IMG/VR virus record: IMGVR_UViG_3300021963_000023
Location: 1 to 64,000 of that record
Reading direction: 5' to 3' (one strand)
DNA length: 64,000 nt
The stretch's first letter is position 1. Every line of letters begins with the position of its first letter. The position numbers and the translations under genes were made by a program. The notes under the pieces were generated by a model, which was not told the origin of the DNA, did no database searches, and saw only the letters and a program-made list of their open reading frames with translations. Shown here piece after piece: positions 49,689-63,430 of this stretch.

Positions 49689-49690
49689 AG

Positions 49691-49821: not shown

Positions 49822-49893
49822 AGGTCTCTAAAGGATTTGAACCCTTACTTCAACGTCCGTAGCGTTGCGTGCTATCCGTTACACCAAAAGACC
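49822..49893 (-). tRNA. tRNA-Arg(ACG)
   Basis: cloverleaf. Confidence 0.88.
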
Positions 49894-49897
49894 AATT

Positions 49898-50101
49898 TTA
49901 CTTCCATTGAGTTTTTCGGTTATACTTCCAACCTCTATACTCTCTTCTTTTATGGGATTCAATCGGTTTCCCGTTACCGTGTCTTCCATGAACAAAAGTT
50001 GGGGAACAGTCATAATACCAACTTCCGTTTCTTTTCTGACATATGAAACAATAGTTGTGTGATTGTTTCTTTGCTTTTACTTTGTACTCTTTGTTTGTCA
50101 T
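49898..50101 (-). CDS. small basic Cys/His protein
   Basis: CFIC...C...H; co-oriented with the tRNAs. Confidence 0.55.
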   Translation of the reverse strand: MTNKEYKVKAKKQSHNYCFICQKRNGSWYYDCSPTFVHGRHGNGKPIESHKRREYRGWKYNRKTQWK

Positions 50102-50180
50102 ATTGCATTAGTTTAACTAATGCTGGTCATATTTCTTTTTCATACTTTACAAATTGTAAGTGTTTTACTTTACATATTAT

Positions 50181-50254
50181 TGGCACGGGTGGAGAGATTC
50201 GAACTCCCATCGACGGTTTTGGAGACCGGAATGCTACCATTGCACCACACCCGT
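50181..50254 (-). tRNA. tRNA-Trp(CCA)
   Basis: cloverleaf, CCA. Confidence 0.9.
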
Positions 50255-50259
50255 GTATG

Positions 50260-50333
50260 TGATCCCTACAAGACTCGAACTTGTGACTCCCTCATTAAAA
50301 GTGAGGTGCTCTAGCCAACTGAGCTAAGAGATC
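50260..50333 (-). tRNA. tRNA-Lys(TTT)
   Basis: cloverleaf. Confidence 0.92.
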
Positions 50334-50338
50334 AATTG

Positions 50339-50411
50339 TGGAGAAAGTTGGTTACGCTCCAACTCCTAAGGATTTTCAGTCCTTCGCTTCTACTAAGTTA
50401 GCTTCATCTCC
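50339..50411 (-). tRNA. tRNA-Phe(GAA)
   Basis: cloverleaf; atypical T-loop AGCGTAA. Confidence 0.78.
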
Positions 50412-50416
50412 TTATG

Positions 50417-50489
50417 TTGGAATGATAAGACTCGAACCTATAACCTTCCGCGTATCAGGCGGATGCTCTCACCATTGAGCTACATTCCA
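50417..50489 (-). tRNA. tRNA-Ile(GAT)
   Basis: cloverleaf, loop CTGATAC. Confidence 0.85.
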
Positions 50490-50492
50490 ATT

Positions 50493-50565
50493 TGGTGGAC
50501 ACGTAGGGAATCGAACCCTTTCACTCTGATTGCAAATCAGGTGGTCTGCCATTGACATCCGGCCC
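50493..50565 (-). tRNA. tRNA-Ala(TGC)
   Basis: G3.U70, TGC loop, CCA; imperfect acceptor stem. Confidence 0.75.
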
Positions 50566-50613: not shown

Positions 50614-50652
50614 AAAACAAAAAACCCTGAGATTTTGTAGTCTCAGGGTTTC
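50614..50652 (-). terminator. terminator of putative attenuator 1
   Basis: AAACCCTGAGA/TCTCAGGGTTT plus T-tract. Confidence 0.78.
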
Positions 50653-50911: not shown

Positions 50912-51454
50912 ATGGCAAAAAATAATAGACTAAACGTCTCTCTATTACCTTTATTGGTACTGTTTAGCTTCTATGGGTTATATTCTTATATAGTTAGCCC
51001 AATAGAAGAAACTAGATCTGTTTATATCTCAAAAGTTGAGAACAAAATTAAGATCGGTAAATTGGCAAACAATAGGAATTTAGCTTTTGGTTGTAAGAAT
51101 ATTTTTGAAGAAATCTTACAAGAAAAGGAATTTGTTATTGTTGATAACCCAAATTCTGCAGATTTGATATTCAATGCTGAGATTTTGTATTTTGACGTTA
51201 ATCGCACAAAAAGAAATATATCAGTATTTCATTCTGACATTGAGGAAACTCTGGTTGTTATGAAAGGAACACTTACAGATAAGAATGGTAAAAAAATAAA
51301 AGAAGCCGTTGCAGAGGAATCTAGTTCAGAAATATCAACATCGACTTTAATAACTGATGAGGGAAGTGATAAAATAAATCAACAAGCACTTTCGTCTGCA
51401 ATAAAAAAAACATCGGAATCACTAATAAATAAAATATTATTTAATAAAAAGTAA
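50912..51454 (+). CDS. membrane-anchored periplasmic protein, CsgG/LptE/TolB_N-like fold
   Basis: N-terminal TM; VYISKVENK...EEILQEK...ADLIFNAEIL...ALSSAIKK. Confidence 0.55.
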   Translation: MAKNNRLNVSLLPLLVLFSFYGLYSYIVSPIEETRSVYISKVENKIKIGKLANNRNLAFGCKNIFEEILQEKEFVIVDNPNSADLIFNAEILYFDVNRTKRNISVFHSDIEETLVVMKGTLTDKNGKKIKEAVAEESSSEISTSTLITDEGSDKINQQALSSAIKKTSESLINKILFNKK

Positions 51455-51455
51455 A

Positions 51456-53099
51456 ATGAAAAAAGCACTCTCTCTTTGTATTTTTTTATTAGTTGCCATG
51501 ACTTCTTTTGGTCAACTAACAATTAATCAAACAATAACACCAACAACAGGATTAAAAGTTGGTGACACATTAACAGTAAAATACACTGTTGTAAGGGGCA
51601 CCACAACCCCTCGTTATTTTTGGTTAAGATACTCATTTAATAATAAAGCATTAACAATGGTACCTAATAGTACTGTTTTTTCACAAGGTAATTCCGTACA
51701 GACATTTTATACTGGTTGGGATAACTATAAGTTTACACCAGCTGCAAATATTGCAGATACACAATTATATTTACAATATCAATCAACTCCTTGGGCATAC
51801 GCCGCTAACACAGATTGGAATGTTGGACAACTTACACTACAAAGAGCTGATGCATCAATTAATGGTGATATCGCAAGTCAAAAATATGTTTTAAAAGATC
51901 AAAACACATATAACAATATTCATAAACTTGATTTATCATATGCTATAAATGATTCGTCTACAAATATTTCTCCAATAACTAGAAATGCAACTAATATTTC
52001 ATTGTCCAATGTTCTTGGAAATACTTCACAGTTTAAGGTAAAAGTTTTGTTTCCACAAGGGTACACAATAACGGATCATAATATTCAGTTAATGAAATTA
52101 AAATCGGATGGTAGTGGTGATATAGATTGGTCACAACAACCCATTGCACAATTACCATTAGACGCTACTGGTGAAGCACTTTTCACAACACAAGTTAAAG
52201 TAGGTGATAGTATAGGATTATGGGTTAGTCCGGCGTCATCAAAAGCTTGGATGAATAACGTAATTACAGTTTCAGATGCATATAAAGCATTCTTAGGCCA
52301 TTCACAAACAGATATTAGTGGTACAGCCAACTTTTTTACATATCCAGTTTTAGAAAAGAAAATTGGTAATGTTACTAAAAACGATGCGATTTTTAACGAA
52401 AGTGACTCATATAATTTATTTGCACATGTCATGGGACAAAACGTATCTGCCAATGCATTTATACCAACTCAAACAGCAACGTCTTGGAGATTTCATAGTG
52501 GGTTATTAAATCAAAGTTGGTTAGATGGTATTCCAAAGTATAAGGTAACTATTGATACACCAATTAAAGAGGTTTATGCAGTATTTGCGTGGGGTGGTGA
52601 TTTAGATTGGTCACATTCATCTGATCCTGCGGTAATTGCTAGTAGAATATCATCAGGACAATTCACAAACTCAATTAATAATACTAAATCAACAATGTCT
52701 ACACAATCAATGGCATATAAAACCGAGGCATTGGAAACAGCTAAATTAAGTGTTGTATCTACATTAGAAAATGGTAAAGTTGTGCTAACAACGAATCTAA
52801 CGAAAGAGGGGTTAGCCGGATTAGAAGTTATAATGAATTATGATAATTCAAAATTAACTTTAGATAATATCATATTTGATTCTGGATCAAACATCACCAA
52901 TTTTTCAACTAAAGAAGAAGGTAGATTAACATTTGGTTCTATTGATCAATTAAAAACAGCTAGAATAAAAGTTGGTACACCATATAAATTAATATTTACA
53001 CCAAAAGATACCTTAACAAATACCGCTGGGTTATTCTACTTTGTTTTGTCTGATGCTGTTGATGGTTTCGGTAACAAAATAAATTTAATTGTAGAATAA
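51456..53099 (+). CDS. secreted protein with cohesin-like ends and a dockerin-like segment
   Basis: signal peptide; VGDTLTVKY..F.LRYSFNNKAL; ITVSDAY...FNESDSY; GLAGLEVIMNYDNSKL. Confidence 0.6.
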   Translation: MKKALSLCIFLLVAMTSFGQLTINQTITPTTGLKVGDTLTVKYTVVRGTTTPRYFWLRYSFNNKALTMVPNSTVFSQGNSVQTFYTGWDNYKFTPAANIADTQLYLQYQSTPWAYAANTDWNVGQLTLQRADASINGDIASQKYVLKDQNTYNNIHKLDLSYAINDSSTNISPITRNATNISLSNVLGNTSQFKVKVLFPQGYTITDHNIQLMKLKSDGSGDIDWSQQPIAQLPLDATGEALFTTQVKVGDSIGLWVSPASSKAWMNNVITVSDAYKAFLGHSQTDISGTANFFTYPVLEKKIGNVTKNDAIFNESDSYNLFAHVMGQNVSANAFIPTQTATSWRFHSGLLNQSWLDGIPKYKVTIDTPIKEVYAVFAWGGDLDWSHSSDPAVIASRISSGQFTNSINNTKSTMSTQSMAYKTEALETAKLSVVSTLENGKVVLTTNLTKEGLAGLEVIMNYDNSKLTLDNIIFDSGSNITNFSTKEEGRLTFGSIDQLKTARIKVGTPYKLIFTPKDTLTNTAGLFYFVLSDAVDGFGNKINLIVE

Positions 53100-53100
53100 T

Positions 53101-55386
53101 ATGAAGAAACTATTAGTAATATGTTTTTTACTAATTTCATTTTTAGGGTTCGGACAGAGCGTATCTGCTCCGGACTCTAAATCGTTTACACCATCCACAA
53201 ACGGACAAGATGGAAGTGGGTTTGTGTTAAGTGGATTTACCGCAACATCTACCTTACTGGCATCCATCAGTTTAATCAACCCATCAACAAATACTACATT
53301 CTATTTAACCACTACAACAGGTTTAACCGCCGCAAGTGGATTTACTTTAAGTGGTAACAAAACTCGTTTGGTTGTAACGGGAACTATGGCAGATATTAAT
53401 ACTGCATTGGCATCCTTAAAAGTGAATACCGGTTCGGTGGTGGGCAATGTTCAATTATCGGTAGCGGCAACTGTAAACCCTGTTGGTTATTTTTATAATG
53501 GTGTCAATGGACACTTTTATAGACCTATATCAAGTGGAGCAACTTATACAAACGCAAGAACATTATCGTCTGAACAAACATTCAAAGGCCAGCAAGGGTA
53601 TTTGGTAACAATAACATCAGCTTCCGAAGACGCTTTTATATTCGCTAATGTTCCACAATCTAGTATTTGGTTTGCATTAACAGATGAAGCATCCGAAGGT
53701 CAATGGAGAATTGATGCGGGGCCCGAAGCGGGAACTTTAATCAAAACATCAAACGGACAGACTGCTGGAAACATACAAGGACAGTACAATAACTGGGCGG
53801 GTGGTGAACCAAATAATAGTGGTAATGAAGATTATGCAGTAACTAAATGGGGTGGTGGAAACCAATGGAACGATTTACCCAATAATTTTAGTTGTGCTTA
53901 TGTAGTTGAATTTGGAACTTGGACTAACCCCGATGATGCAACCTTTACTGAATTTTATACTAATAGCGTAACTCACTCAAACGGAGAAGTATTAAGAGCC
54001 TCATTCAATATCGATTTTGGTAGTAATGTAGATGAAACCAAATTTTCAGCAAAAGGATATACATATACAAATAATACTTGGAATGTAGTAAACGGAACCG
54101 CTAAACAATTAAGTGGTTTGGGTAAAGTTGATTTGACAAGTTTATTGGATACCGCAAAAGTTTCAAATGGAGGGGTTAAAGCAAACACAACATCAGGACA
54201 AGTTGAATGGTGTGTGATTTATCAATATGATGCAACTAACCAAAGATATAGAATTGGGATAGATAGTAGAGAAGTAAATGGAATCCTATCAGACCCCACT
54301 AAAATTAGTAGTTTACAATTATTTGATTTATGGAACGGGCCTGTAACATTTAATTCTTATGACCAAAATGGTTGGACAGAAGTTTATATTTATACTCAAA
54401 CTCAATTCAATTTTAGTGGTTCATCTTTTGCGTCTAATATAAGAGCAGGAAATGGATTTTATGGATTACAAGCGGAGTTTACATTTACCGAAATTACCGC
54501 ATATAAACCACATGGAATTGAATTAACACATTCAAATCAAACCGAATTAAACACATTGTATAATAGTATAGTTGGTGTATCGGATGTGTATTTAGCATTT
54601 AAGGAATTAGCGGATGGTGGATTATTTGGAAATCAAAGTGGGATGGGATTAACAAATGGTATCCAGTATTTGAACGCTGATGTTGATGGAAATGGTATAT
54701 TCAATGAATCAGACACATACAAATTATTGCAACATCTTACAGGTGTTCAACCACTTTCACAATCTACAGCATTAACATATTTGATGAAGTTATATAACAA
54801 ATCGGATTATGATGCGGTAACAACATCAAATTGGGGAACTAAATTTAATTCAACTCGTAATTTAATTCCTTTTACTTTGGGTGGATTAAATAATGCATAC
54901 AATATAAGTGTAACTTGGTTAGGTGATGTAAACCTTTCGCATTCTGCACAACAAAGTGTAAGTGGTGTTAGTAGTAATTCTGTTAAGAGTATGGGATTAA
55001 TGAGTAATTCTATTACAAACGAGGTAAATGTTATACTAATGGGCGAAATTGTGGGTAATAAAATTATAAAGACATTATCAGTAGATCCATTACAACAGGA
55101 ATTAGTTGGAATTCAATTTCAGTTAAACTATGATAACACTAAATTAAAATTTGAAAAAGTCGAATTTAACACAAAGGGTAACCCCACAAATTTTGGAACG
55201 GATAAGGGTAATTTCATTAATGTTGGTTCTTTACTAACGAGTGGGGATGTATTAGATAAAACAACCGAATATAAAGTTGTTTTTTCACCTATAAATAATG
55301 TAACTGATATGTTAGGGCTAACATCAATATCAACAACTGATGCGGTTAATAAAAGTGGGAAACAATTAAAAATAAAAATAAACTAA
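53101..55386 (+). CDS. secreted C-type lectin + dockerin-like + cohesin-like adhesin
   Basis: signal peptide; GYLVTITS..E, WAGGEPNN, WNDL; ADVDGNGIFNESD; GIQFQLNYDNTKL. Confidence 0.75.
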   Translation: MKKLLVICFLLISFLGFGQSVSAPDSKSFTPSTNGQDGSGFVLSGFTATSTLLASISLINPSTNTTFYLTTTTGLTAASGFTLSGNKTRLVVTGTMADINTALASLKVNTGSVVGNVQLSVAATVNPVGYFYNGVNGHFYRPISSGATYTNARTLSSEQTFKGQQGYLVTITSASEDAFIFANVPQSSIWFALTDEASEGQWRIDAGPEAGTLIKTSNGQTAGNIQGQYNNWAGGEPNNSGNEDYAVTKWGGGNQWNDLPNNFSCAYVVEFGTWTNPDDATFTEFYTNSVTHSNGEVLRASFNIDFGSNVDETKFSAKGYTYTNNTWNVVNGTAKQLSGLGKVDLTSLLDTAKVSNGGVKANTTSGQVEWCVIYQYDATNQRYRIGIDSREVNGILSDPTKISSLQLFDLWNGPVTFNSYDQNGWTEVYIYTQTQFNFSGSSFASNIRAGNGFYGLQAEFTFTEITAYKPHGIELTHSNQTELNTLYNSIVGVSDVYLAFKELADGGLFGNQSGMGLTNGIQYLNADVDGNGIFNESDTYKLLQHLTGVQPLSQSTALTYLMKLYNKSDYDAVTTSNWGTKFNSTRNLIPFTLGGLNNAYNISVTWLGDVNLSHSAQQSVSGVSSNSVKSMGLMSNSITNEVNVILMGEIVGNKIIKTLSVDPLQQELVGIQFQLNYDNTKLKFEKVEFNTKGNPTNFGTDKGNFINVGSLLTSGDVLDKTTEYKVVFSPINNVTDMLGLTSISTTDAVNKSGKQLKIKIN

Positions 55387-56276
55387 TGAAAAAGATATTA
55401 TTAATTATATTGCTAATTTCAACAACACTTGTTTCAACCGCACAAACACAAACACCCGATACATTACAACTATCACCAAAAGAATTATTTGGAGAGAGTG
55501 ATGATTGGAATGATGTGGGTATATTACAATCTTATGTGGATTTTTCAAAAGATGTTCTTTCATCCTCAAACCTATCGGTTGGTATAATCGGAAAGCAAGT
55601 ATCTACAACTCTTAATTTAGGATATAGTAAGTCATCTAAAAATGGACAATGGGGTCACTCATTTGCAGCATCAATAAATCCTATATGGAATTATTATGGT
55701 GTGGGATATGGCTTTTCAAAAAATACCGAAAAGAGAACAACAACAATACAAACATTCTATTCAACCGATTTTGACTTCCAAAAGGATATTAACATTTCAT
55801 TTATAGATGTATTCAGAACTAAAAAGTGGGGAACTTTTGGATATAGTTTAACGGCATCTAAAACATATTGGGATTCATATCAAGGGGAATGGGAAGGAAA
55901 ATATACTATTGATGTAAATGGCAATTTTTTAGATTTGATTTATCCGCAAATGCCGGCATCATCACAAACCACTTATAAAGGAATGTTGATGTACACATAT
56001 ACACTTAAAACAAAGAGAGTTAATATATCTCCGCAAATATTTGCTATGAGTGATGTGTATGTAGATTTCAAAGATGGTGAATCTGATTTTGGTTATAAAA
56101 ATGATTTTAATTTGGACTTATATTATGGTACATCTATGGATTGGAAAATAACTAAAAGGTTCATATTAAACACAAATGTCAGATATAACACAACTTGGGA
56201 TAAGTTGTCAGAATCCGTAGGATATAAAAAGAGTAACCCATTAATGTTTATGATAGGAACAAACTTTCAATTTTAA
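55386..56276 (+). CDS. outer-membrane beta-barrel protein
   Basis: signal peptide; amphipathic strands; C-terminal GTNFQF beta-signal. Confidence 0.7.
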   Translation: MKKILLIILLISTTLVSTAQTQTPDTLQLSPKELFGESDDWNDVGILQSYVDFSKDVLSSSNLSVGIIGKQVSTTLNLGYSKSSKNGQWGHSFAASINPIWNYYGVGYGFSKNTEKRTTTIQTFYSTDFDFQKDINISFIDVFRTKKWGTFGYSLTASKTYWDSYQGEWEGKYTIDVNGNFLDLIYPQMPASSQTTYKGMLMYTYTLKTKRVNISPQIFAMSDVYVDFKDGESDFGYKNDFNLDLYYGTSMDWKITKRFILNTNVRYNTTWDKLSESVGYKKSNPLMFMIGTNFQF

Positions 56277-56279
56277 GAT

Positions 56280-56621
56280 ATGAAAAGATTATTATATATG
56301 TTTCTTTTTTTACTATGGGGATGTACTAAACCGGAGTTACCCACACCAACACCATCTGTTCAGAAAATTTTCAGTGTAAGTGAAAGTAGCGTTACAGATG
56401 GGCAATCTATTCATTTTGACTTACCATCGTCAGGTACCTATATATTAACACTTATTGATGTTGAGAGCGGACAAGTTGTTAGTCGAGAAAAATTTATTGG
56501 CGTTGCCGGGGAAAATATCAAAAAAATATATACCAAATCTATAGTATCGAAGTATTTATATTTGACACTTGCTTCGGCAGATAATGCCCAAATAAGTAAA
56601 ACAAAATTAACGCTAAACTAA
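56280..56621 (+). CDS. lipoprotein with Ig/T9SS-CTD-like domain
   Basis: lipobox LWGC; LTLID..GQVV...Y.LTL. Confidence 0.6.
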   Translation: MKRLLYMFLFLLWGCTKPELPTPTPSVQKIFSVSESSVTDGQSIHFDLPSSGTYILTLIDVESGQVVSREKFIGVAGENIKKIYTKSIVSKYLYLTLASADNAQISKTKLTLN

Positions 56622-56622
56622 A

Positions 56623-56997
56623 ATGAAAAAAACATTAACATTTGGATTATTAATACTTGGCTTAATTGGTTGCACTAAAGACGATCTTTTTATCAACCAA
56701 GAGATTAACCAAATTAAACCAGAGTTACAAATAAAGAATTCGGTTGGCCTTAAACTAGAGACAGCGTTTGTAACCGGAGAGGTTGCTATGAACGTGAAAA
56801 GTGAAGTTGGACAATCGGTAACCATAAAGATTTTTGATATTTCCAATAGAGTGGTATCAAAAGAGACCATGACCGTTAAATCTGGTGATAATATTTTAAA
56901 GGTATATACATCAGCTTTACCGTCATCAGCATATAGAATTGGTTTATATGACTCTAAGGGTAATCAATTGGGAATTACAGATTTTAATAAATTATAA
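56623..56997 (+). CDS. lipoprotein with T9SS-CTD-like domain
   Basis: lipobox LIGC; IKIFDISNRVV...G.N....S.LPS.AY.I...FNK. Confidence 0.65.
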   Translation: MKKTLTFGLLILGLIGCTKDDLFINQEINQIKPELQIKNSVGLKLETAFVTGEVAMNVKSEVGQSVTIKIFDISNRVVSKETMTVKSGDNILKVYTSALPSSAYRIGLYDSKGNQLGITDFNKL

Positions 56998-57012
56998 ATA
57001 AAAATACATAAA

Positions 57013-57327
57013 ATGTCAGAAGAATTAGAACAAAATAACGATGGTACATGGACTGGGTTAAAGAAAACCATTGTCGGTGTAATAACAACAGCAGTAATGG
57101 GCTTAGGAACTTGGGGAGTAACTCAGTTAACAGGTGGTGATGAGCCGGCTCCAGTACAACAATCGGCTCCTGTAATTAACATTACAAACTCAAATCAACA
57201 ATCTCAATCAGCAGGTGGTACAACTAAAATTATCGAAAGAGAAAGAGTTGTGGAAAAACCAGCAGCGGCACCAAAACCTAAGAAAAAAGAAGGTGATGAG
57301 TTTAAAGAAGAAGCACCTAAGTGGTAA
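57013..57327 (+). CDS. single-TM protein
   Basis: hydrophobic helix; P/Q/K-rich tail. Confidence 0.65.
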   Translation: MSEELEQNNDGTWTGLKKTIVGVITTAVMGLGTWGVTQLTGGDEPAPVQQSAPVINITNSNQQSQSAGGTTKIIERERVVEKPAAAPKPKKKEGDEFKEEAPKW

Positions 57328-57328
57328 T

Positions 57329-57502
57329 ATGGAACAGGGATTAAGTTTTATAGTGGTAGTTGCTTTGTGTAATATAGCTATGTTTGTATTTAATTCACCA
57401 ATTATGTTTTTAACATTTTTTATGGCGGGTGGTTGTTATTTGGTAATAAGAGGAAGAAAAAAAGGTTGGAAATTACCTAAAAACATAAAGGAGACACATT
57501 AA
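57329..57502 (+). CDS. small two-TM protein
   Basis: MEQGLSFIVVV...; start taken from the internal ATG of ORF 57215-57502. Confidence 0.5.
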   Translation: MEQGLSFIVVVALCNIAMFVFNSPIMFLTFFMAGGCYLVIRGRKKGWKLPKNIKETH

Positions 57503-57528
57503 TTAATTAATTTAAAAAAAAATAAAGT

Positions 57529-58137
57529 ATGAATAATCAACAACCAAGCGGTTTTAAAGAGTTATTAAACTCAATGATGAATAGAAGGTGGTTAATGACC
57601 TTAATTGTATTAATCACATTTATGTGCACTACATTTGGAATTTTAATTTCTATCCACGCAGAGGCAACTGTTGGACAGGAATGGAAAGAACTTATGTTAT
57701 TGTTATTAGGTGCTTTCATTGGTTCTTATGGTAAAATCATTGATTATTGGTTTAGTGATACCGATAAGGATAAGATGCTAGTGCAAAAGATGGATGAGGA
57801 AGATGGTGTTAGTTTAAGTAATACTGCAAATATGAAAGATTCTGAACCTAAACAATACTCACCTATTATTCCAGAAGCATTTCAAACAGATATCGAAAAG
57901 GTAAATGATACATTTAAACAAGTACCAACAACACAATCAAGGACCGGTATTGAAGTTGATGAAGATGGTGATGGGACTATGGATGGTATTGACTTCGATG
58001 GTGATGGTAAGATCGATGTATATTTCGCACACAGACAATGTCAACACGTTTGGGGAGATTCAGATGGGGATGGCGACCTAGAATGTCTGATATGTGGTAA
58101 AATAAAAGATCCTGAACCTGGCGAGGAAGAAGGATAA
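57529..58137 (+). CDS. two-TM protein with DxDGDG Ca-binding repeats
   Basis: LLLGAFIGSYGKIIDYWF; DEDGDG, DFDGDG, DSDGDG; C.H...C..C. Confidence 0.7.
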   Translation: MNNQQPSGFKELLNSMMNRRWLMTLIVLITFMCTTFGILISIHAEATVGQEWKELMLLLLGAFIGSYGKIIDYWFSDTDKDKMLVQKMDEEDGVSLSNTANMKDSEPKQYSPIIPEAFQTDIEKVNDTFKQVPTTQSRTGIEVDEDGDGTMDGIDFDGDGKIDVYFAHRQCQHVWGDSDGDGDLECLICGKIKDPEPGEEEG

Positions 58138-58167
58138 TAAAAATAATACGCGTAAAAATTTTAAAAT

Positions 58168-58455
58168 ATGGCAAGTTTTTTAAAAGAATTATTTAATGAC
58201 AATAACACAATTAACGAAAAATCAGTAGTTGGTTTTGCATCATTTGTTTGTATGGTTATAGCACTAGTTGTTGATTTAGTAACCGGGTACATGGGTAAAC
58301 CATTAGTAATAAACGAGTTCATTTTTGATGGCTTTTTAGTTATCACTCTTGGTTCTTTTGGTATCGCATCTGTTGATAAATGGATCAACAACAAAGGTGG
58401 TAAAAAAGAAGAAAGTGATAAAAAAGACGACGCACAAATTGAAATGGAGGGATAA
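58168..58455 (+). CDS. small two-TM protein (holin-like)
   Basis: two TM segments, charged tail. Confidence 0.6.
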   Translation: MASFLKELFNDNNTINEKSVVGFASFVCMVIALVVDLVTGYMGKPLVINEFIFDGFLVITLGSFGIASVDKWINNKGGKKEESDKKDDAQIEMEG

Positions 58456-58473
58456 TAACTAAAAACAAAAAAA

Positions 58474-58701
58474 ATGACAAACTTTATAAATAAGGCTAAA
58501 AATATGATTTTTAGTTTAACACTTGTTCTTACAGGTACCTGGATACTATTTGCGCTTTCTTTCCAATTGTATGCAGTGTTTTTACAAGTAAGTGGACAAG
58601 AAGAAAAAATGACCAGAATATCTAATGAGATATCTTGGAGAGTTGATGGTACGTTTAAAAATAACCCAGATAATATCTGGTACGAAGGCCCTTCTAAGTA
58701 A
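58474..58701 (+). CDS. small single-TM protein
   Basis: ORF in operon. Confidence 0.6.
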   Translation: MTNFINKAKNMIFSLTLVLTGTWILFALSFQLYAVFLQVSGQEEKMTRISNEISWRVDGTFKNNPDNIWYEGPSK

Positions 58702-58722
58702 TTTAGGTTAAAAAATATAGAC

Positions 58723-59454
58723 ATGATACAAAAGATAAAAGCATTTGTAATTGGATTATTATTATGCACCTTTGCACAAGATATAATCGCACAAACAATC
58801 GGTAAAACAAAAACAGAAGATTACAAGGCCGATTTTGAAAAAAAGAAAGACATATCGGCTTACTTAGATTATGATGGCCCTCAAATACCAATTCAAATAT
58901 TAAAAGCAGGTATATCAGATGAAATATACGAAATGTATCCCGAATTAAAAGAAAAACGTGTTGGTTTAGGTGTTGCCAATATTTCTATGGAATACTTGGA
59001 GAATTTAAATAGATTTATTTTTACTGAGGATAAAACAGAAATAAAGAACCGTATGGTTAAACAGTTTCAAGCGTCACAATCAGGTATTTCAGAAGATAAA
59101 TTAGATGGCCGAGGTAAAATTAGATTAGCAAAATATTTTGTAACAATTGAGTGTTACGATTATTCAATATCTGAAGACGAAACGATTAATCTAAAAGACG
59201 GTATAAAAGATAATATGGTAACTCGTATAGGTCTTCAGGTTAGATTTACCGATGCGGAAACTGGAGCTATGTTTGGGGCGTCTGGATTAGGTGAAGCGAC
59301 AACAAGAAGAGAATTAACTCTTTTATCTGATGCAACGATCGACCCAATTAAATTCAATCAATCAACAATTTCAATTGCAACTAAAAAGGCCTTAGACATC
59401 GCTTGTGCAAATATTCTTGACAGAATGATTAAAAAGGGCGTTTTTACAAAATAA
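58723..59454 (+). CDS. CsgG/HfaB-like secretion channel protein
   Basis: signal peptide; LENLNRFIFTE, AKYFVT..CYDY, IGLQVRFTDAETG...SGLGEA, ATKKAL..A. Confidence 0.7.
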   Translation: MIQKIKAFVIGLLLCTFAQDIIAQTIGKTKTEDYKADFEKKKDISAYLDYDGPQIPIQILKAGISDEIYEMYPELKEKRVGLGVANISMEYLENLNRFIFTEDKTEIKNRMVKQFQASQSGISEDKLDGRGKIRLAKYFVTIECYDYSISEDETINLKDGIKDNMVTRIGLQVRFTDAETGAMFGASGLGEATTRRELTLLSDATIDPIKFNQSTISIATKKALDIACANILDRMIKKGVFTK

Positions 59455-59525
59455 TAATTATTTAAATAGTAGTATAAAGGGGTTTAATTGCCCCTTTTTT
59501 TATATTTATAATAAAACGATAAAGT

Positions 59526-60341
59526 ATGAAAACGTTATTAATTACATTATTATTCATTCCAACTATTATGTTAGGACAGGTTTCATCTTGGAGAAGTAAT
59601 CCTCCTCAACCACAAAGAACTGAAACACCCAGAGTCCAACCAACAACCCCACAAAGAAATGATGTGAGTAGATGGAGAACACAAACAGAACCAATTAGAC
59701 CTGGTCAAGCTGTTCCACAACAACCATTGGTTAGAAGATGGAGAAGTAATGTGGCAAACCCATATGGCTACTATTGGGGAGATTGGGGTTGGTATCAACC
59801 GTTTCCTTACATTTGGTATGACGATTTTGGATGGAGACAAAGAAGTGTAGTTAGAATATATGAAAACGGTAAAAAAGATACAATTAGAAAAGAAACAGTT
59901 TACACATCTTTTGGTATTGGACATACAAATAATAAACAAGCCTCTTTTTGGGGCGCGGTAGGAGGTAAAAAAAGTTATTTTATTTTAGATTATACAATGT
60001 CATATGATATTGATCAAAATCAATATTATCCATACGGTACAATTAATGAGGTAGATTTCACACTAAGTAAAAACGATTTTATTAAACAAGGTGCTTTATA
60101 TCTTGGCGGAGGTAAAAGATTTGGTAAGTTAGGCGTTCATGGTATGATTGGATTTGGTAATGAGAATGTTAGATATCAAGGTAGAGACGCTCTTGGTGGT
60201 ATATCATTTCCAAAATCAAATTCAAATTTCACAACATTTAAAATTGGTATTATTAGAGACTTCAAATTTTTTACAATAAAATTAGATAGAGATCCAATAA
60301 GAAATTATAACCAAGTAAGTGTTGGTTTCCATAATAAGTAA
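59526..60341 (+). CDS. outer-membrane beta-barrel protein with P/Q/R-rich N-terminus
   Basis: signal peptide; C-terminal beta strands. Confidence 0.6.
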   Translation: MKTLLITLLFIPTIMLGQVSSWRSNPPQPQRTETPRVQPTTPQRNDVSRWRTQTEPIRPGQAVPQQPLVRRWRSNVANPYGYYWGDWGWYQPFPYIWYDDFGWRQRSVVRIYENGKKDTIRKETVYTSFGIGHTNNKQASFWGAVGGKKSYFILDYTMSYDIDQNQYYPYGTINEVDFTLSKNDFIKQGALYLGGGKRFGKLGVHGMIGFGNENVRYQGRDALGGISFPKSNSNFTTFKIGIIRDFKFFTIKLDRDPIRNYNQVSVGFHNK

Positions 60342-61756
60342 TGAAAAAAATATTATTTTTTATTTTTATTTTTATTTCGATAAAGTCATTTGGCCAAACC
60401 TATACACAAACATTTATTGATAAATGTAGTGGGGAAAAAAAGGTTGCTACAACAACAATGATGAATGGTTATGCAACAGTATCTTTTTATAATCAAGTAA
60501 GGACATTTTCACCATTAGAGGTTCAGTCAGGGGTTGTACAAGCTTGGTTATTAACAACTAAGACCACTTATGAAGCAATTACATGTCCAGTAATAAATAA
60601 CCCCATTGTACAACAAACGGTAACAAATGCTGCGGCACAAACGGCAGCAAATGCAGCATCATCAGCAGCTAGTAGTGCAGCTGCGGCGGCTAGTAGTTCA
60701 GCAAGTTCTGCAGCTAGCAGTTCTGCAAGTAGTGCTGCAGCAAGTTCAGCGGCATCAACACCGCCACCTATAACACCACCACCAGCTAGTAGTAGTTCAA
60801 CGCCACCACCGGCTAGTAGTTCTTCTTCATCAAGTAGTTCTTCTTCATCAAGTAGTTCTTCATCTTCTAGTTCATCATCCTCATCAGAATCTAAAACAGA
60901 AACAAAAACAGAGGCTAAAACAGAATCTAAGTCTGAAAGTAAAAGTGAGTCAAAATCAGAAAGTAAAAGCGAGGAAAAAAAGGAAGAGTCTAAATCAGAA
61001 ACTAAGGAAGAAAAGAAAGAAGAATCTAAATCAGAAGAAAAGAAGGAGGAAGAAAAGAAAGAGGAAAAAAAAGAAGAGAAGAAAAAAGAAAAAGCTGTTG
61101 CATCAAACCCTATGTTGTTATCCTCCGATTTGTCCGTTATTGAATCACCAGATGGTAGATGGTTACAATCGGCAACAGTTGGTGTATCAAAATCTTCATT
61201 AATGGGTGATGAAAGTTATTCTGCCAACGCGGTAATCATGAGTGATTTAAAAACGTTTATTGTCAGTGGTGGATATACTAAAATGGATTTTTCTAGTGGT
61301 AAGTTAAAAGCAATACATTCATATTCAACAGCCTTTGCATATCTAAATGGGGTATACATGAATTTGATGGGGTATACATACATTAAGCCAACAACAAAAT
61401 ATGGTGTGTTTGGATATAACGTTGGTTTAATAAATTTACTTATTAAGAACTCTACAGGTGGATATGATCATAATATGTCATCATCTGTTGTTGGATTTTG
61501 GACAAAACCATATCAGTACAATAAAAAATTAAGTATTTCACCACAGGTATTTACTATGTTCGCGCCATTATCTTGGAATAGTGTTACGGGCGGATCAACA
61601 GTAAACAGAAGTGTTGGGTTTTTATTAGGTTCTTCTTTTGATTATAAAATAACAAAAAGATTTGGATTCACAATAAACTATAAATTAAGCGGTAACACAT
61701 CAGCAGGATCACCATTTTTAAGTAACTTTTTAATTGGATCAAGGATGATTTTATAA
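60341..61756 (+). CDS. beta-barrel protein with Ser/Ala/Pro and Glu/Lys-rich stalk
   Basis: signal peptide; poly-S/EK linker; C-terminal barrel similar to 55386 (ISPQ.F.M; S.D.KITKRF.L..N). Confidence 0.65.
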   Translation: MKKILFFIFIFISIKSFGQTYTQTFIDKCSGEKKVATTTMMNGYATVSFYNQVRTFSPLEVQSGVVQAWLLTTKTTYEAITCPVINNPIVQQTVTNAAAQTAANAASSAASSAAAAASSSASSAASSSASSAAASSAASTPPPITPPPASSSSTPPPASSSSSSSSSSSSSSSSSSSSSSSSESKTETKTEAKTESKSESKSESKSESKSEEKKEESKSETKEEKKEESKSEEKKEEEKKEEKKEEKKKEKAVASNPMLLSSDLSVIESPDGRWLQSATVGVSKSSLMGDESYSANAVIMSDLKTFIVSGGYTKMDFSSGKLKAIHSYSTAFAYLNGVYMNLMGYTYIKPTTKYGVFGYNVGLINLLIKNSTGGYDHNMSSSVVGFWTKPYQYNKKLSISPQVFTMFAPLSWNSVTGGSTVNRSVGFLLGSSFDYKITKRFGFTINYKLSGNTSAGSPFLSNFLIGSRMIL

Positions 61757-61761: not shown

Positions 61762-61792
61762 AAAAACCCTTGTAAAAACAAGGGCCTTTTTT
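61762..61792. terminator. terminator between convergent operons
   Basis: CCCTTGT/ACAAGGG flanked by A and T tracts. Confidence 0.65.
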
Positions 61793-61842: not shown

Positions 61843-62196
61843 TTATTTTTTATTTTTTGTCAAGCTTTTATACAAACTTATTATTTCAGAACATTTTTCA
61901 TAATCTTCTATATCTTCAAAATATGGGATTACATGATCAATAAGAATATCGGGATCTTTTTTAGATAATTGAAATTCTGTTTTCCAGTCCATTATCTCAC
62001 CTTTACTCAATAATAAGCTAGCATTAACAACAAATTTAATTTCTTTTTTTCTTGTTGTTATTAAATGTTTAAACGAATCAACAACACCACCATAAATTAA
62101 TGGTTTGTTTTTATCTAAAAAATCTTCAAAAGAGTTATATTTTCCAGTTACGTGAACATCAAGTGTTTCTGGTTCGTTGGTGTTAGTTGTTCTCAT
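61843..62196 (-). CDS. hypothetical protein with UVR-like C-terminus
   Basis: EDIEDYEKCSEI. Confidence 0.6.
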   Translation of the reverse strand: MRTTNTNEPETLDVHVTGKYNSFEDFLDKNKPLIYGGVVDSFKHLITTRKKEIKFVVNASLLLSKGEIMDWKTEFQLSKKDPDILIDHVIPYFEDIEDYEKCSEIISLYKSLTKNKK

Positions 62197-63430
62197 TTTT
62201 AAATGGTTTTGAGTATGTTGGGTATAATAATTTCCAAATAGTTTGTTTAGGGTTTATCGAATCTAACATGTTAAATAAAATATTAGAGTGCCTATATTGT
62301 TTTGCTCTTAAAGCAAAGTCTTTTCTACTTAAATTTCGACCATTTAAATTTTCAAATATTTCTCTATAATCTTTTTCTATGTTTTCAAATCTTACTGTTA
62401 AATCACGGGCGGTTTCTTTTACCCAATTATTAAATTCATCCGGCACCTTTTCAAGTAATTCATCGAATGGTTTATTGTCTTTTAGGTATTCCCAAATATC
62501 TCTATTCGAGATGTTTGTTAGGATTCTGTGTAGGCGAATGTATTCGTCACCTTTTATTTTCATTCGAAAGCCATTCTTAAATCTGATTACATACCCTTCT
62601 TTATCGTTACTAATCTCTTCTTTAAGTAAATCATATCCTTCTCCCCATGTTTTATATAGGGTAACAACATTAATGTTTAAATTTTTTATTAGATTTTTTA
62701 ATCTAATATCTTCATTATTATCGTTGTGTATATTAACCTCATCACCAGTTTTGGTGTGGATCATACCAAGTAAAATTAAATCTTCAAAATCATAGTTACA
62801 AACTATTCTGTTTTCTGGGTAAATAATTTCAAACAAATATGTGTAATCTTTTGCCAATCGATTGTAGTCATATTTCTCTAATAATTCTCGACCTTTAATT
62901 GCTTGTGGCGAAGTAAATGAACCACGTGTTGCTAATATCCATTCACCCTTTGTTTTTGGTGTTGGGTCATAATAAGTGTTATCAAAATCAGGTAAATTGT
63001 TTGGATCAAAGAATCTTTCCATACCCGTTTCATAATTGTTATTAAACCATATGTTATATCTTCTTTCATCAGTTAATTCTTCTTCATAATAAAAAAGAAT
63101 ACCTAATGAACCATCCATTTTTTCATATACCTCAAAATTTTCATTTGGTAAATCCTCAGGTTTATGTTCCTCATAATTGAAGAATTTCTTGAATGGTCTT
63201 GCAACAATTTCACCTTTAGTGTTTGTAACTAGCCCACGACATTGTATGGTAATATCATCCCATAGTCTCTCATATTGAACTCTTGGAGAATAATTCCAAA
63301 TAGTTAAATCAAGAGTCGGGTGAGTTTGTTTATGCAACAAACCATCTTTGTAATATTTTTCTAATGTTGCTAACACAGTTCTTGAAAGGATTTTTTGATG
63401 GAGGATAAAGAGTCTTGGTAAACGATTCAA
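62183..63430 (-). CDS. T4 Rnl1-type RNA ligase
   Basis: CRGLV, PFKKFFN, EKMDGS motif I, TRGSF, FEII, EGYVI, KIK; true start may be the GTG at 63376. Confidence 0.88.
   Translation of the reverse strand: MNRLPRLFILHQKILSRTVLATLEKYYKDGLLHKQTHPTLDLTIWNYSPRVQYERLWDDITIQCRGLVTNTKGEIVARPFKKFFNYEEHKPEDLPNENFEVYEKMDGSLGILFYYEEELTDERRYNIWFNNNYETGMERFFDPNNLPDFDNTYYDPTPKTKGEWILATRGSFTSPQAIKGRELLEKYDYNRLAKDYTYLFEIIYPENRIVCNYDFEDLILLGMIHTKTGDEVNIHNDNNEDIRLKNLIKNLNINVVTLYKTWGEGYDLLKEEISNDKEGYVIRFKNGFRMKIKGDEYIRLHRILTNISNRDIWEYLKDNKPFDELLEKVPDEFNNWVKETARDLTVRFENIEKDYREIFENLNGRNLSRKDFALRAKQYRHSNILFNMLDSINPKQTIWKLLYPTYSKPFKNENN

What the first reader, a model, noticed from the sequence alone, without database searches (positions are those of the whole stretch)
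50912..61756. Phage-encoded ~11 kb cell-surface assembly locus: CsgG-like pore, beta-barrels and cohesin/dockerin-like lectin adhesins
Seen: 14 co-oriented genes, nearly all with signal peptides, lipoboxes or TM helices. Two secreted paralogs (51456, 53101) share a C-terminal block: xxVSDxYxAF, then D/N-V-D/T-xN..FNESDxY, then GDxxxSHS, then a cohesin-like GL/IxxxxNYDNxKL. The 53101 protein also has a C-type lectin with EPN and WND motifs. The locus further encodes a CsgG-like protein, a second protein of similar fold, three barrels, two CTD-like lipoproteins and a DxDGDG membrane protein. Known: CsgG/HfaB proteins are outer-membrane secretion channels, cohesins bind dockerins, and EPN marks Man/Glc/GlcNAc-type lectins. 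Inference: subunits carrying both cohesin and dockerin could chain head-to-tail into a lectin-bearing fibre or coat on the infected cell, serving adhesion to new hosts, receptor masking or grazer avoidance. I know of no described phage system like this.
Basis: partly seen in the sequence, partly recalled or inferred. Interest (0 to 1): 0.86.

Follow-up and report, generated by a model that had tools for sequence, protein, structure and literature searches.

The report
Phage cohesin-lectin cell-envelope gene module
A large family of phages that infect Flavobacterium-like water bacteria carries a conserved block of about 14 genes for exported proteins (sugar-binding lectins with cellulosome-type connector domains, outer-membrane proteins, lipoproteins and a CsgG-shaped protein) that most likely re-dresses the surface of the infected cell; nobody has studied it, and a cultured phage now makes it testable.

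Summary
Window 50912-61756 has 14 tightly packed, co-oriented genes, all with a signal peptide, lipobox or membrane helix.

What was verified:
- Two paralogs share a ~290-aa C-terminal block that ends in a true cohesin domain (fold search and an iterative profile link to Pfam-validated cohesins).
- One paralog has a C-type lectin; EPN and WND are invariant in 55/55 homologs.
- The 58723 protein has a CsgG fold (Foldseek E 1e-8).
- The module is syntenic in more than 100 IMG/VR contigs. A mini-version sits in cultured Flavobacterium phage immuto, among replication genes.

- The CsgG-like protein has no lipobox, no Pfam match and, apparently, no membrane hairpins. A secretion pore is therefore doubtful.
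- In three related lineages the cohesin protein ends in a canonical type IX secretion (T9SS) sorting domain. That points to the host T9SS as the export route.
- The barrels and the second CsgG-like fold remain probable, not proven.

Best reading: a phage-made lectin assembly held together by cohesin-dockerin contacts and displayed on the infected cell. Its role is unknown; receptor masking and adhesion are the leading candidates. The module is undescribed and directly testable.

The parts
50622..50651 (.). Bidirectional terminator-like hairpin separating the tRNA array from the module
50912..51454 (+). g1: 180 aa, N-terminal hydrophobic anchor plus a small alpha/beta domain. Homolog of immuto gp019. 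Possible distant paralog of g11.
   Evidence: Present in 36/36 full loci. hhalign to gp019: 88%, E 2.8e-6. Shares the C-terminal motif K.NQ..S.A.KK with g11. Sub-threshold TraT hits.
51456..53099 (+). g2: 547 aa secreted protein. Two beta-sandwich domains, a helical dockerin-like region, a linker and a C-terminal cohesin.
   Evidence: AF2 pLDDT 86.8. Foldseek cohesins E 7e-7, TM 0.59-0.68. Iterative profile E 3e-6.
53101..55386 (+). g3: 761 aa secreted protein. N-terminal domain, C-type lectin (about residues 136-277, EPN/WND), middle domain, dockerin-like loop NADVDGNGIFNESD, and a C-terminal cohesin.
55386..56276 (+). g4: 296 aa probable outer-membrane beta-barrel, paralog of the g13 C-terminal domain. 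The last residue is Phe.
   Evidence: hhalign 95%, E 3e-8. Phe terminus in 16/16 homologs and about 10 amphipathic beta segments.
56280..56621 (+). g5: 113 aa lipoprotein with a small beta-sandwich; paralog of g6
   Evidence: Lipobox in 67/70 homologs. BLASTP to g6 E 3e-6.
56623..56997 (+). g6: 124 aa lipoprotein. Residues after the Cys fit x-K-(D/E)-(D/E), the Bacteroidota surface-export pattern. Weak similarity to a T9SS CTD.
57013..57327 (+). g7: 104 aa bitopic inner-membrane protein with a Pro/Ala/Lys-rich tail ending in Trp. Core gene, homolog of immuto gp016.
   Evidence: 36/36 loci
57329..57502 (+). 57-aa two-helix membrane ORF; the 14th gene
   Evidence: Conserved in 24 loci at 70-79% identity.
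57529..58137 (+). g8: 202 aa with two hydrophobic helices, then DxDGDG loops and a Cys-rich end. The parts occur separately in other lineages.
58168..58455 (+). g9: 95 aa, two membrane helices and a charged tail (holin-like in shape only)
58474..58701 (+). g10: 75 aa small membrane protein. Its position varies between loci.
58723..59454 (+). g11: 243 aa CsgG-fold protein with a signal-peptidase-I signal, not lipidated. It is the most conserved gene of the module.
   Evidence: AF2 pLDDT 75.6. Foldseek CsgG E 1e-8. 79-94% identity across loci. 5740 database clusters.
59476..59497 (+). Internal terminator-like hairpin after g11
59526..60341 (+). g12: 271 aa. Pro/Gln-rich N-terminus with three WR(S/T) repeats, then a probable small beta-barrel. 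Accessory gene (22/36 loci).
60341..61756 (+). g13: 471 aa. Two-Cys N-terminal domain, a ~170-aa Ser/Pro/Lys/Glu low-complexity stalk and a C-terminal 217-aa barrel-like domain. Homolog of immuto gp018.
61767..61784 (.). Bidirectional terminator-like hairpin closing the module

Best explanation
This is a phage-encoded module that remodels the host cell envelope. It belongs to a large family of phages of Flavobacterium-like Bacteroidota.

SHOWN. All its products are sent through the Sec pathway into the envelope. Two of them (g2, g3) are multi-domain binding proteins: beta-sandwich domains in g2, and a Ca-dependent EPN (mannose/GlcNAc-type) lectin in g3. Each ends in a dockerin-like module followed by a cohesin.

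INFERRED. Cohesin-dockerin contacts join these subunits into a multivalent lectin assembly on the surface of the infected cell. In related lineages the cohesin subunit carries a type IX secretion sorting domain, so the host T9SS is the likely way across the outer membrane. In the window's own lineage that domain is missing from g2 and g3, and CTD-like lipoproteins (g5, g6) lie next to them, so the route here is unresolved.

The phage-made barrel-type proteins are taken to anchor or assemble the structure: g4, g12, and g13 with its long Ser-rich stalk. So are the surface-type lipoproteins, the bitopic protein g7, and the two CsgG/LptE-fold periplasmic proteins g11 and g1. These are seen as helpers rather than as a curli-type pore.

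The pay-off for the phage is not known. The leading ideas are masking of glycosylated receptors (superinfection or progeny-loss avoidance) and sticking infected cells to glycan-rich particles or neighbouring cells.
For: ENVELOPE TARGETING. Signal peptides with the Bacteroidota Gln rule, lipoboxes and membrane anchors are conserved across homologs.

COHESIN. Foldseek E 7e-7, TM 0.59-0.68. Pfam Cohesin is above threshold in relatives: L072 34 bits, immuto gp015 36.7 bits. 35/60 family members match it. An iterative profile seeded on gp015-type cohesins (iteration-2 model built from the other cohesin proteins it found) reaches g3 at E 7.8e-8 and g2 at E 3e-6 before either is in the model.

DOCKERIN-LIKE MODULE. 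An EF-hand-type loop is conserved in 45/55 g3 homologs. Pfam Dockerin_1 gives weak hits in 20/60 members.

LECTIN..

T9SS LINK. gp015 has Por_Secre_tail at 34.6 bits against a cut-off of 27. All 120 listed homologs carry Cohesin plus Por_Secre_tail. L164 encodes a cohesin-dockerin-cohesin-CTD protein with a canonical YPNP motif. T9SS rules follow PMC12618676.

UNITY OF THE MODULE. g1, g3, g7 and g11 are in 36/36 full loci; g8 in 35/36; g2, g5 and g6 in 31/36. The same set occurs in immuto (gp013-gp019) and in L164.

NOT VIRION. In immuto the module lies among SSB, RecA, DnaB and RNR genes. There are no PHROG structural hits.

PHAGE-RESTRICTED. Among 185,579 species genomes, only MAG contigs match.
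Against: - No binding, localisation or expression data exist.
- In the window itself g2 and g3 lack a T9SS sorting domain, so their passage across the outer membrane is unexplained.
- The dockerin module is atypical. It has one good Ca loop and a degenerate first repeat, and the window's own proteins give no Pfam hit.
- The window's own cohesin scores are below the Pfam cut-off (16.4 and 18.3 bits against 24.1).
- Barrel folds were not tested, and no known OMP family matches.
- The roles of g11, g1 and g7-g10 are guesses.
- A GH19 endolysin sits inside the module in one lineage, which hints at a link with lysis.
Confidence: 0.45

Rival explanations
1. g11 forms a CsgG-type oligomeric channel in the outer membrane. 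Through it the phage exports g2 and g3, which then polymerise head to tail into a fibre.
For: The top 23 Foldseek hits are all CsgG, aligned over nearly the full length. A phage protein annotated as CsgG is the top hit in BFVD. g11 is the most conserved gene and is always present. g2 and g3 in the window lack any other recognisable outer-membrane export signal.
Against: - No lipobox (2/49 homologs).
- No PF03783 hit in 33 homologs.
- No hit to any PDB sequence.
- hhalign against a CsgG profile aligns only 22 columns. In that register the TM1 counterpart is an acidic hairpin (invariant D146, S148, S150, D152, E153) and the TM2 counterpart is a short coil.
- No CsgE, CsgF or amyloid subunit is present.
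- TM-scores are only 0.43-0.50.
- CsgG passes unfolded small subunits, not 550-760-aa multi-domain proteins (established knowledge of curli secretion).
Confidence: 0.12
2. The module acts inside the periplasm rather than on the surface. The lectin-cohesin complexes bind peptidoglycan or lipopolysaccharide sugars, or they engage and jam the T9SS through their sorting domains. Either would change what the host can display, for example phage receptors or gliding adhesins.
For: g2, g3 and immuto gp013 and gp014 have only Sec signals. EPN lectins accept GlcNAc (established knowledge of C-type lectins). g11 and g1 look like soluble periplasmic proteins of the LptE/PelC/CsgG fold class. CTD-like domains occur as separate lipoproteins.
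Against: Canonical T9SS sorting domains on the cohesin subunit in three lineages are most simply read as export signals. The sequence after the g6 lipobox fits the surface-export pattern. The long Ser-rich stalk of g13 suits a surface display role.
Confidence: 0.15
3. The module is part of the lysis machinery. Small membrane proteins g7-g10 would act as holin or antiholin, and the lipoproteins and barrels would help to break the outer membrane.
For: In L072 a GH19 endolysin lies between the lipoprotein and g7. In L164 it lies just upstream on the other strand. g9 has the shape of a class II holin.
Against: In the window the GH19 gene is 33 kb away, at 17753-18349. In immuto the endolysin is about 6 kb outside the module and has its own small neighbours. 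Lectin, cohesin and CsgG-fold proteins have no known role in lysis. g8-g10 are not part of the conserved core.
Confidence: 0.08
4. The module is a glycan-capture device, like a polysaccharide-utilisation locus. It would feed the infected cell by binding sugars at the surface with lectin and CBM-like proteins and importing them.
For: One lineage adds a TonB-dependent-receptor-like barrel (Plug plus OMP_b-brl_3) followed by a 400-aa lipoprotein. The g2 N-terminal domains resemble CBM2 and pilin-type sandwiches. The lectin is conserved.
Against: The transporter is absent from the window, from immuto and from L164. There are no glycoside hydrolases or SusD hits in the module.
Confidence: 0.08
5. 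The proteins are virion parts, such as decoration or fibre proteins with Ig-like and lectin domains.
For: Lectin and Ig-like domains are common on phage particles (general knowledge). L164 has tail-collar-like genes nearby.
Against: Every product carries a Sec signal, a lipobox or a barrel-type C-terminus. No PHROG structural family matches. In immuto the module sits in the replication gene block.
Confidence: 0.03

Closest known systems
Cohesin-dockerin assemblies (cellulosomes, and the non-cellulosomal cohesin/dockerin proteins of bacteria and archaea such as PDB 2xdh, 2jh2, 4dh2)
   Same: A nine-strand cohesin sandwich. A Ca-loop-plus-helix dockerin-like element. Subunits that carry both module types, plus an anchoring subunit. 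In immuto the layout is lectin+dockerin-like, cohesin-like+dockerin-like, and cohesin+anchor signal.
   Different: It is encoded by a lytic phage. The cargo is lectins and binding domains, not enzymes. The dockerin is atypical: one good loop, with an extra beta element and a GD(V/L)(N/D)xSHS motif. Anchoring is by a T9SS sorting domain rather than by SLH domains or sortase. No binding has been shown.
Curli channel CsgG / holdfast HfaB (PF03783), and the wider LptE/PelC/FlgT/HpaA fold class
   Same: g11 has the overall fold, with CsgG as best match. It shares the 'R-V-x-D-x-x-T-G-E' strand-turn-strand motif.
   Different: g11 has no lipid anchor, no sequence-family match, no hydrophobic membrane hairpins and no curli partners. 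It may behave more like the ring-forming or plug-type periplasmic members (PelC, LptE).
Type IX secretion cargo and its shuttle/anchor barrels (PorV for type A, PorP/SprF for type B; PMC12618676, PMC9143113)
   Same: A Sec signal plus a C-terminal Por_Secre_tail domain on the cohesin protein in immuto, L164 and L063/66. Barrel genes are encoded next to the cargo genes, as for type B cargo and PorP/SprF.
   Different: The cargo is phage-encoded. The window's own g2 and g3 lack the sorting domain. The phage barrels show no sequence match to PorV or PorP/SprF.
Envelope proteins of huge phages (bioRxiv 10.64898/2026.10.24.761521: 1,603 beta-barrel OMPs, sortase B with substrates, PspA)
   Same: Large phages encode outer-membrane proteins and possible routes to display phage proteins on the host surface. 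678 of those OMPs come from freshwater phages.
   Different: That survey does not mention CsgG, cohesin, dockerin or lectin. It does not describe this module.
[quoted passage not shown]
   Same: A true homolog of the module: lectin (38% identity to the g3 lectin), cohesin, g7, g11 (52%), g13-like and g1-like genes in one block.
   Different: It is smaller (7 genes). Lectin, adaptor and cohesin are separate proteins, and the cohesin carries the T9SS domain. It has no g4, g5, g6, g8-g10 or g12. The genes are annotated only as domain-containing or hypothetical proteins.

Membership tests
CsgG/HfaB (PF03783) | Sequence match to the family profile | tested here: not met
   No Pfam hit for g11 or for any of 33 homologs. 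No hit to PDB sequences with a profile. hhalign against an enterobacterial CsgG profile: 22 columns, probability 2.7%.
CsgG/HfaB (PF03783) | CsgG three-dimensional fold | tested here: met
   Foldseek top 23 hits are CsgG: E 1e-8 to 1e-5, 220-230 columns, TM 0.43-0.50. The model has pLDDT 75.6.
CsgG/HfaB (PF03783) | N-terminal lipobox (outer-membrane lipoprotein) | tested here: not met
   Lipobox in 2/49 homologs. An A/G/S-Gln signal-peptidase-I site in 48/49.
CsgG/HfaB (PF03783) | Two amphipathic membrane hairpins per subunit that build the 36-strand barrel | tested here: not met
   In the register, the first hairpin's counterpart (146-163) is acidic, with invariant D146, S148, S150, D152 and E153. 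The second is a short coil. This rests on a weak alignment and a monomer model.
CsgG/HfaB (PF03783) | Nonameric ring | not testable with these tools
   No multimer prediction was available.
CsgG/HfaB (PF03783) | Partner genes (CsgE/CsgF and an amyloid subunit, or HfaA/HfaD) | tested here: not met
   No such Pfam or NCBIfam hit in any of the 13 larger genes.
Cohesin (PF00963) | Profile match above the curated cut-off | tested here: inconclusive
   The window's g2 scores 16.4 bits and g3 18.3 bits against a cut-off of 24.1. Relatives pass: L072 34.0 bits and gp015 36.7 bits. 35/60 block members hit, best E 2e-6. An iterative profile from validated cohesins reaches g3 at E 7.8e-8 and g2 at E 3e-6.
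Cohesin (PF00963) | Nine-strand jelly-roll fold | tested here: met
   Nine strands at 428-546, pLDDT above 90. Foldseek to cohesins E 7e-7, rmsd 2.9-5.5 A, TM 0.59-0.68.
Cohesin (PF00963) | Binds a dockerin | not testable with these tools
   Needs a complex prediction or a binding assay.
Dockerin type I (PF00404) | Duplicated ~22-residue segment, each with a Ca-binding loop and a helix | tested here: inconclusive
   One good loop in g3 (NADVDGNGIFNESD plus helix), conserved in 45/55 homologs. The first repeat and the g2 loop are degenerate. Pfam Dockerin_1 hits 20/60 members, best E 3.8e-4, and none in the window's own proteins. The region is helical in the model.
C-type lectin domain (PF00059) | Profile match above the cut-off | tested here: met
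   25.8 bits against 22.6. PDB langerin and CLEC4D at E about 1e-4. Immuto gp013 at E 3e-15.
C-type lectin domain (PF00059) | Ca/sugar site residues (EPN, Glu, WND) | tested here: met
   Aligned with the same residues of langerin and CLEC4D. EPN and WND are present in 55/55 homologs.
C-type lectin domain (PF00059) | Conserved disulfide pairs | tested here: not met
   Only one Cys lies in the domain of g3 and of gp013.
T9SS type A cargo (Por_Secre_tail, PF18962) | Sec signal plus C-terminal sorting domain | tested here: not met
   For the window's g2 and g3, the proteins end with the cohesin and have no CTD. The feature is met in relatives: gp015 at 34.6 bits against 27, 120/120 homologs, L164 and L063/66.
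Bacteroidota surface lipoproteins | Lipobox Cys followed by a K-(D/E)2-type export signal | tested here: met
   g6 has a lipobox in 70/73 homologs, and the residues after the Cys are mostly x-K-(D/E)-(D/E). The export-signal rule is recalled from the Capnocytophaga/Bacteroides literature and was not checked here. Surface exposure itself is untested.
Outer-membrane beta-barrel proteins (BAM substrates) | Signal peptide, amphipathic strands, aromatic C-terminal residue, barrel fold | tested here: inconclusive
   Signal peptides are present. The terminal residue is Phe in g4 16/16, and Phe or Leu in 62/67 of the g13 family. About 10-12 amphipathic segments by a crude scan. Only faint Pfam barrel hits. 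No fold prediction was run.
Phage lysis cassette | Endolysin with adjacent holin and spanins | tested here: not met
   No muralytic domain in the window's module. The GH19 gene is at 17753-18349. It lies inside the module only in the L072 lineage.
TraT (PF05818), for g1 | Profile match above the cut-off | tested here: not met
   16.4 and 20.5 bits against a cut-off of 31, both to the same profile segment.

The most novel reading that the evidence does not exclude
Phages of Flavobacteriia build a 'lectinosome'. This would be a self-assembling cohesin-dockerin scaffold loaded with Ca-dependent lectins. It would be exported by hijacking the host's type IX secretion system and held by phage-made outer-membrane anchors and a ring of CsgG-fold protein. 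The infected cell would thereby get a new sugar-binding coat that controls which phages, cells or particles can stick to it.
Probability: 0.3. Interest if true: 0.85.

Novelty: new variant of a known kind. Interest (0 to 1): 0.72.

Why it matters
If true, it would be the first cohesin-dockerin assembly found in a virus. It would also be the first case of a phage supplying its own cargo to the Bacteroidota type IX secretion system.

The module is common. The g11 family alone has 509 IMG/VR loci and 5740 protein clusters, mostly from lake and brackish-water metagenomes. Whatever it does to infected Flavobacteriia may therefore matter for phage-host dynamics and for particle attachment in natural waters.

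It also supplies three protein families without any described relative:
- g11, a non-lipidated CsgG-fold protein kept at 79-94% identity;
- the g4/g13 barrel-type domain;
- the g1 family.

Because phage immuto and its host Flavobacterium sp. LMO8 are in culture, the idea can be tested directly.

Tried and rejected
SEARCHES THAT FOUND NOTHING USEFUL.
- PHROGs gave nothing for 10 module proteins except a low-complexity hit.
- NCBIfam gave nothing meaningful.
- Megablast of the locus against INPHARED phages: no match.
- tblastn of g11 against plasmids: no match.
- tblastn of two other large window ORFs against phages: no match.
- Profile searches against PDB sequences for g1, the g2/g3 block, g4, g12, the g13 C-terminal domain and g11: no usable hit.
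- Literature searches for phage CsgG, phage cohesin/dockerin and phage T9SS cargo found no description of this module.

SEARCHES THAT WERE SATURATED OR UNINFORMATIVE.
- The g11 search of the 5.8-billion-protein set was saturated by close relatives and showed no distant ones.
- Pfam on 67 diverse g13-family proteins gave only low-complexity artefacts.

TESTS THAT FAILED OR WERE TOO WEAK.
- The CTD profile built from immuto-type proteins did not expand under a strict threshold and did not reach the window's g5 or g6. The 'CTD-like' label therefore stays weak.
- hhalign of the g2/g3 block against single immuto proteins gave correctly placed but weak matches, E 0.001-0.05.
- My crude scan for uncharged alternate faces did not separate CsgG from g11. 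The hairpin argument rests instead.
- Sigma-70 promoter counts were below the shuffled expectation and are not relevant to Bacteroidota.

IDEAS CONSIDERED AND DROPPED.
- g7 as a TonB-like or spanin-like protein: it has no C-terminal domain and no coiled coil.
- g8 as a periplasmic dockerin partner: two helices put its tail in the cytoplasm, and in L072 the same domain has no membrane segment.

Full report
SOURCE AND SETTING. The window is the first 64 kb of IMG/VR contig IMGVR_UViG_3300021963_000023 (251 kb); locus and window coordinates coincide. GC is about 32%. Several features fit a large phage. There is an array of 21 tRNA genes plus a tmRNA at 39.7-50.5 kb, and Rfam adds a 22nd tRNA-like gene at 50496-50565. 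There is a T4-type RNA ligase and a P-loop kinase, a phage-type glycosyltransferase and a GH19 endolysin homolog. Most other proteins match nothing. The host is inferred to be a Flavobacterium-like member of the Bacteroidota. Signal peptides end in A/G/S-Gln in nearly all homologs. The only cultured relative infects Flavobacterium sp. LMO8. MAG bins holding related contigs include Sediminibacterium, Flavobacterium and 'Bacteroidetes'.

THE OBSERVATION. Fourteen + strand genes lie between bidirectional terminator-like hairpins at 50622-50651 and 61767-61784, with a third hairpin after g11. I call them g1 to g13, plus a 57-aa ORF at 57329-57502 that is conserved in 24 loci. Their targeting signals are as follows.
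- g2, g3, g4, g11, g12 and g13 have cleavable signal peptides.
- g5 and g6 have lipoboxes, in 67/70 and 70/73 homologs.
- g1, g7, the 57-aa ORF, g8, g9 and g10 have membrane helices.

g2 and g3 share a C-terminal block of about 290 residues (24% identity, E 1e-14), and its motifs are invariant in 60 sequences.

THE TWO LARGE SECRETED PROTEINS. An AlphaFold2 model of g2 (pLDDT 86.8) shows these parts in order:
- two beta-sandwich domains (21-146 and 156-258);
- a helical region (264-325);
- a small beta element with the GDLDWSHS motif and one helix;
- a disordered linker (405-416);
- a nine-strand sandwich (428-546).

Foldseek matches the last domain to cohesins (4dh2, 2vn6, 2xdh, 2jh2) at E 7e-7 to 1e-5, TM 0.59-0.68. 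The window's own Pfam Cohesin scores are below the cut-off. Relatives pass it, however (L072 34 bits, immuto gp015 36.7 bits), and 35 of 60 block members hit it. An iterative profile seeded on gp015-type cohesins (its second-round model was built from the other cohesin proteins found in round 1) reaches g3 (E 7.8e-8) and g2 (E 3e-6) before either is in the model, and it converges without drift.

The helical region carries a dockerin-like Ca loop plus helix. It is clear in g3 (NADVDGNGIFNESD, conserved in 45/55 homologs) and degenerate in g2. Dockerin_1 gives weak hits in 20 of 60 members. A profile of the block finds no PDB sequence. 'Cohesin' is therefore solid, and 'dockerin' remains dockerin-like.

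g3 also has a C-type lectin domain above the Pfam cut-off. It aligns with langerin and CLEC4D, including EPN, the following Glu, and WND. EPN and WND are present in all 55 distinct homologs. The usual disulfides are absent.

THE CsgG-LIKE PROTEIN. The g11 model (pLDDT 75.6) matches CsgG in its top 23 PDB hits: E 1e-8 to 1e-5, 220-230 aligned columns, TM 0.43-0.50. Next come FlgT, HpaA, GNA1162, PelC and LptE. In the viral structure library the best hit is a metagenomic phage protein named CsgG. The fold claim is therefore right.

Family membership is not supported:
- no PF03783 hit in g11 or in 33 homologs;
- no hit to PDB sequences;
- only a 22-column hhalign match to a CsgG profile, covering a strand-turn-strand motif;
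- no lipobox (2/49 homologs);
- no curli partner genes.

Using the register, the counterpart of CsgG's first membrane hairpin is a strongly acidic hairpin with invariant polar residues. The second hairpin is replaced by a short coil. I therefore regard g11 as a soluble periplasmic protein of the CsgG/LptE/PelC fold class, possibly ring-forming, and not as a demonstrated pore. It is remarkably constrained, at 79-94% identity in loci where its neighbours fall to 22-85%. It is also abundant: 509 IMG/VR loci and 5740 clusters.

g1 is homologous to immuto gp019 (hhalign 88%). It shares only a C-terminal strand-helix motif with g11. The 'second protein of similar fold' is plausible but unproven.

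BARRELS AND LIPOPROTEINS. The C-terminal 217 residues of g13 are homologous to g4 (hhalign 95%, E 3e-8); g12 is unrelated. A profile of g4 plus the g13 C-terminal domain finds only 163 representative clusters among 1.84 billion proteins. The domain is always at the C-terminus, behind a conserved two-Cys N-terminal domain and a low-complexity stalk. No known OMP family matches. Signal peptides, a terminal Phe (or Leu) and about 10-12 amphipathic segments fit outer-membrane barrels, but no fold test was possible.

g5 and g6 are paralogous lipoproteins. In g6 the residues after the lipid-carrying Cys fit the acidic surface-export pattern of Bacteroidota (the rule is recalled from the literature). 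Similarity to T9SS sorting domains is weak.

CONSERVATION AND RELATIVES. tblastn of all 13 proteins against 160 fetched loci shows one conserved gene order. In the 36 loci with full flanks the counts are as follows.

| Gene(s) | Loci with the gene (of 36) |
|---|---|
| g1, g3, g7, g11 | 36 |
| g8 | 35 |
| g2, g5, g6 | 31 |
| g13 | 29 |
| g4 | 24 |
| g12 | 22 |

Among 185,579 species genomes only six MAG contigs match g11, so the module looks phage-restricted.

[quoted passage not shown] Its genes gp013-gp019 lie among SSB, RecA, DnaB, RNR and a secreted nuclease. They encode the following:
- a lectin with a dockerin-like loop (Lectin_C, E 3e-15);
- a protein that by eye has an N-terminal cohesin-like domain and a C-terminal dockerin-like domain;
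- a 243-aa protein with Cohesin (E 5.9e-9) plus Por_Secre_tail (E 2.4e-8), both above their cut-offs;
- a g7 homolog;
- a g11 homolog (52% identity);
- a g13-like protein;
- a g1-like protein.

All 120 listed homologs of the cohesin protein carry both Pfam domains. In L164 (a 254-kb contig) one 642-aa protein combines cohesin-like, dockerin-like, cohesin and a canonical T9SS sorting domain. It is followed by g7, the membrane part of g8, g11, g13, a dockerin-like protein, a g4-like barrel and a g1-like protein. L063 and L066 show the same cohesin-CTD ending. In L072 the cohesin protein is followed by a separate CTD-like lipoprotein and a GH19 endolysin. That lineage also adds a TonB-dependent-receptor-like barrel and a 400-aa lipoprotein.

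HOW IT MOST LIKELY WORKS.
- Shown: all products are directed to the envelope. Cohesin and a functional-looking EPN lectin are present. The module is a conserved unit. It lies outside structural gene blocks. In three lineages the cohesin subunit has the signal that T9SS uses for export across the outer membrane (rules as in PMC12618676).
- Inferred: the dockerin-like and cohesin modules bind one another, giving a multivalent lectin assembly on the cell surface. The barrels, lipoproteins, g7 and the CsgG-fold proteins anchor or assemble it.
- Unresolved: how g2 and g3 of the window, which lack the sorting domain, cross the outer membrane, and what the phage gains from the module.

Masking of glycosylated receptors and adhesion of infected cells are reasonable ideas without direct evidence. 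Rivals are the curli-type pore model, a purely periplasmic action, a lysis accessory role, glycan capture, and virion parts. They are weighed in the rival list.

COMPARISON AND NOVELTY. The parts are known folds. The combination, and its presence in a phage, are not described in the papers I could search. A 2026 preprint reports many outer-membrane proteins, and a sortase-based display route, in huge phages. It does not mention CsgG, cohesin, dockerin or lectin. GenBank labels immuto gp013 and gp015 by domain only. I rate this a new variant of known kinds (cohesin-dockerin surface assemblies; phage-encoded envelope remodelling), with high interest because it is widespread, unusual and testable in a cultured pair.

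Noticed in passing
window 39720-50565, minus strand: Dense array of 21 tRNA genes plus a tmRNA (tag peptide ending VAVA). Rfam adds a 22nd tRNA-like gene at 50496-50565 (29.7 bits, just above the gathering score) that ARAGORN did not call.
   Followed up: partly
window 22196-22798 (+): Secreted non-specific endonuclease (NUC1 type) with a signal peptide ending SFSQ. It is 48% identical to immuto gp012, which lies directly upstream of the module in that phage. A periplasmic or exported phage nuclease is unusual.
   Followed up: partly
window 17510-18352 (+), homology 17753-18349: GH19-type endolysin, 73% identical to the one that sits inside the module in the L072 lineage. Here it is 33 kb away from the module.
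   Followed up: partly
window 62183-63866 (-): T4 Rnl1-type RNA ligase (E 9e-18) next to a P-loop kinase (AAA_33). This looks like a tRNA-repair pair, close to the tRNA array. The pair is conserved downstream of the module in many loci (d2, d3).
   Followed up: no
window 27078-31317 (+) and 42649-43791 (-): Several glycosyltransferase-type genes (PF11397 GlcNAc transferase at E 4e-70; HtrL_YibB plus DUF3431; DUF6734). L072 also has two GT1 genes just downstream of its module. Together these suggest the phage alters envelope glycans as well.
   Followed up: no
window 48590-49018 (-): A 142-aa ORF with a Bacteroidota-type signal peptide (ending AKGQ) is embedded in the tRNA array. It was found only in the two loci cut from the window's own contig.
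   Followed up: no
L072 6496-9947; L164 4208-5725: Related phages carry extra envelope genes beside the module. L072 has a TonB-dependent-receptor-like barrel with a following 400-aa lipoprotein. L164 has another small barrel and two tail-collar-domain proteins.
   Followed up: partly
window 60620-61100 (within g13): About 170 residues of Ser/Ala, Ser/Pro and Lys/Glu low-complexity sequence. It produces spurious Pfam and PHROG hits (CDC27, TFIIA, phrog_4668) and a spurious overlapping ORF at 60945-61202.
   Followed up: yes
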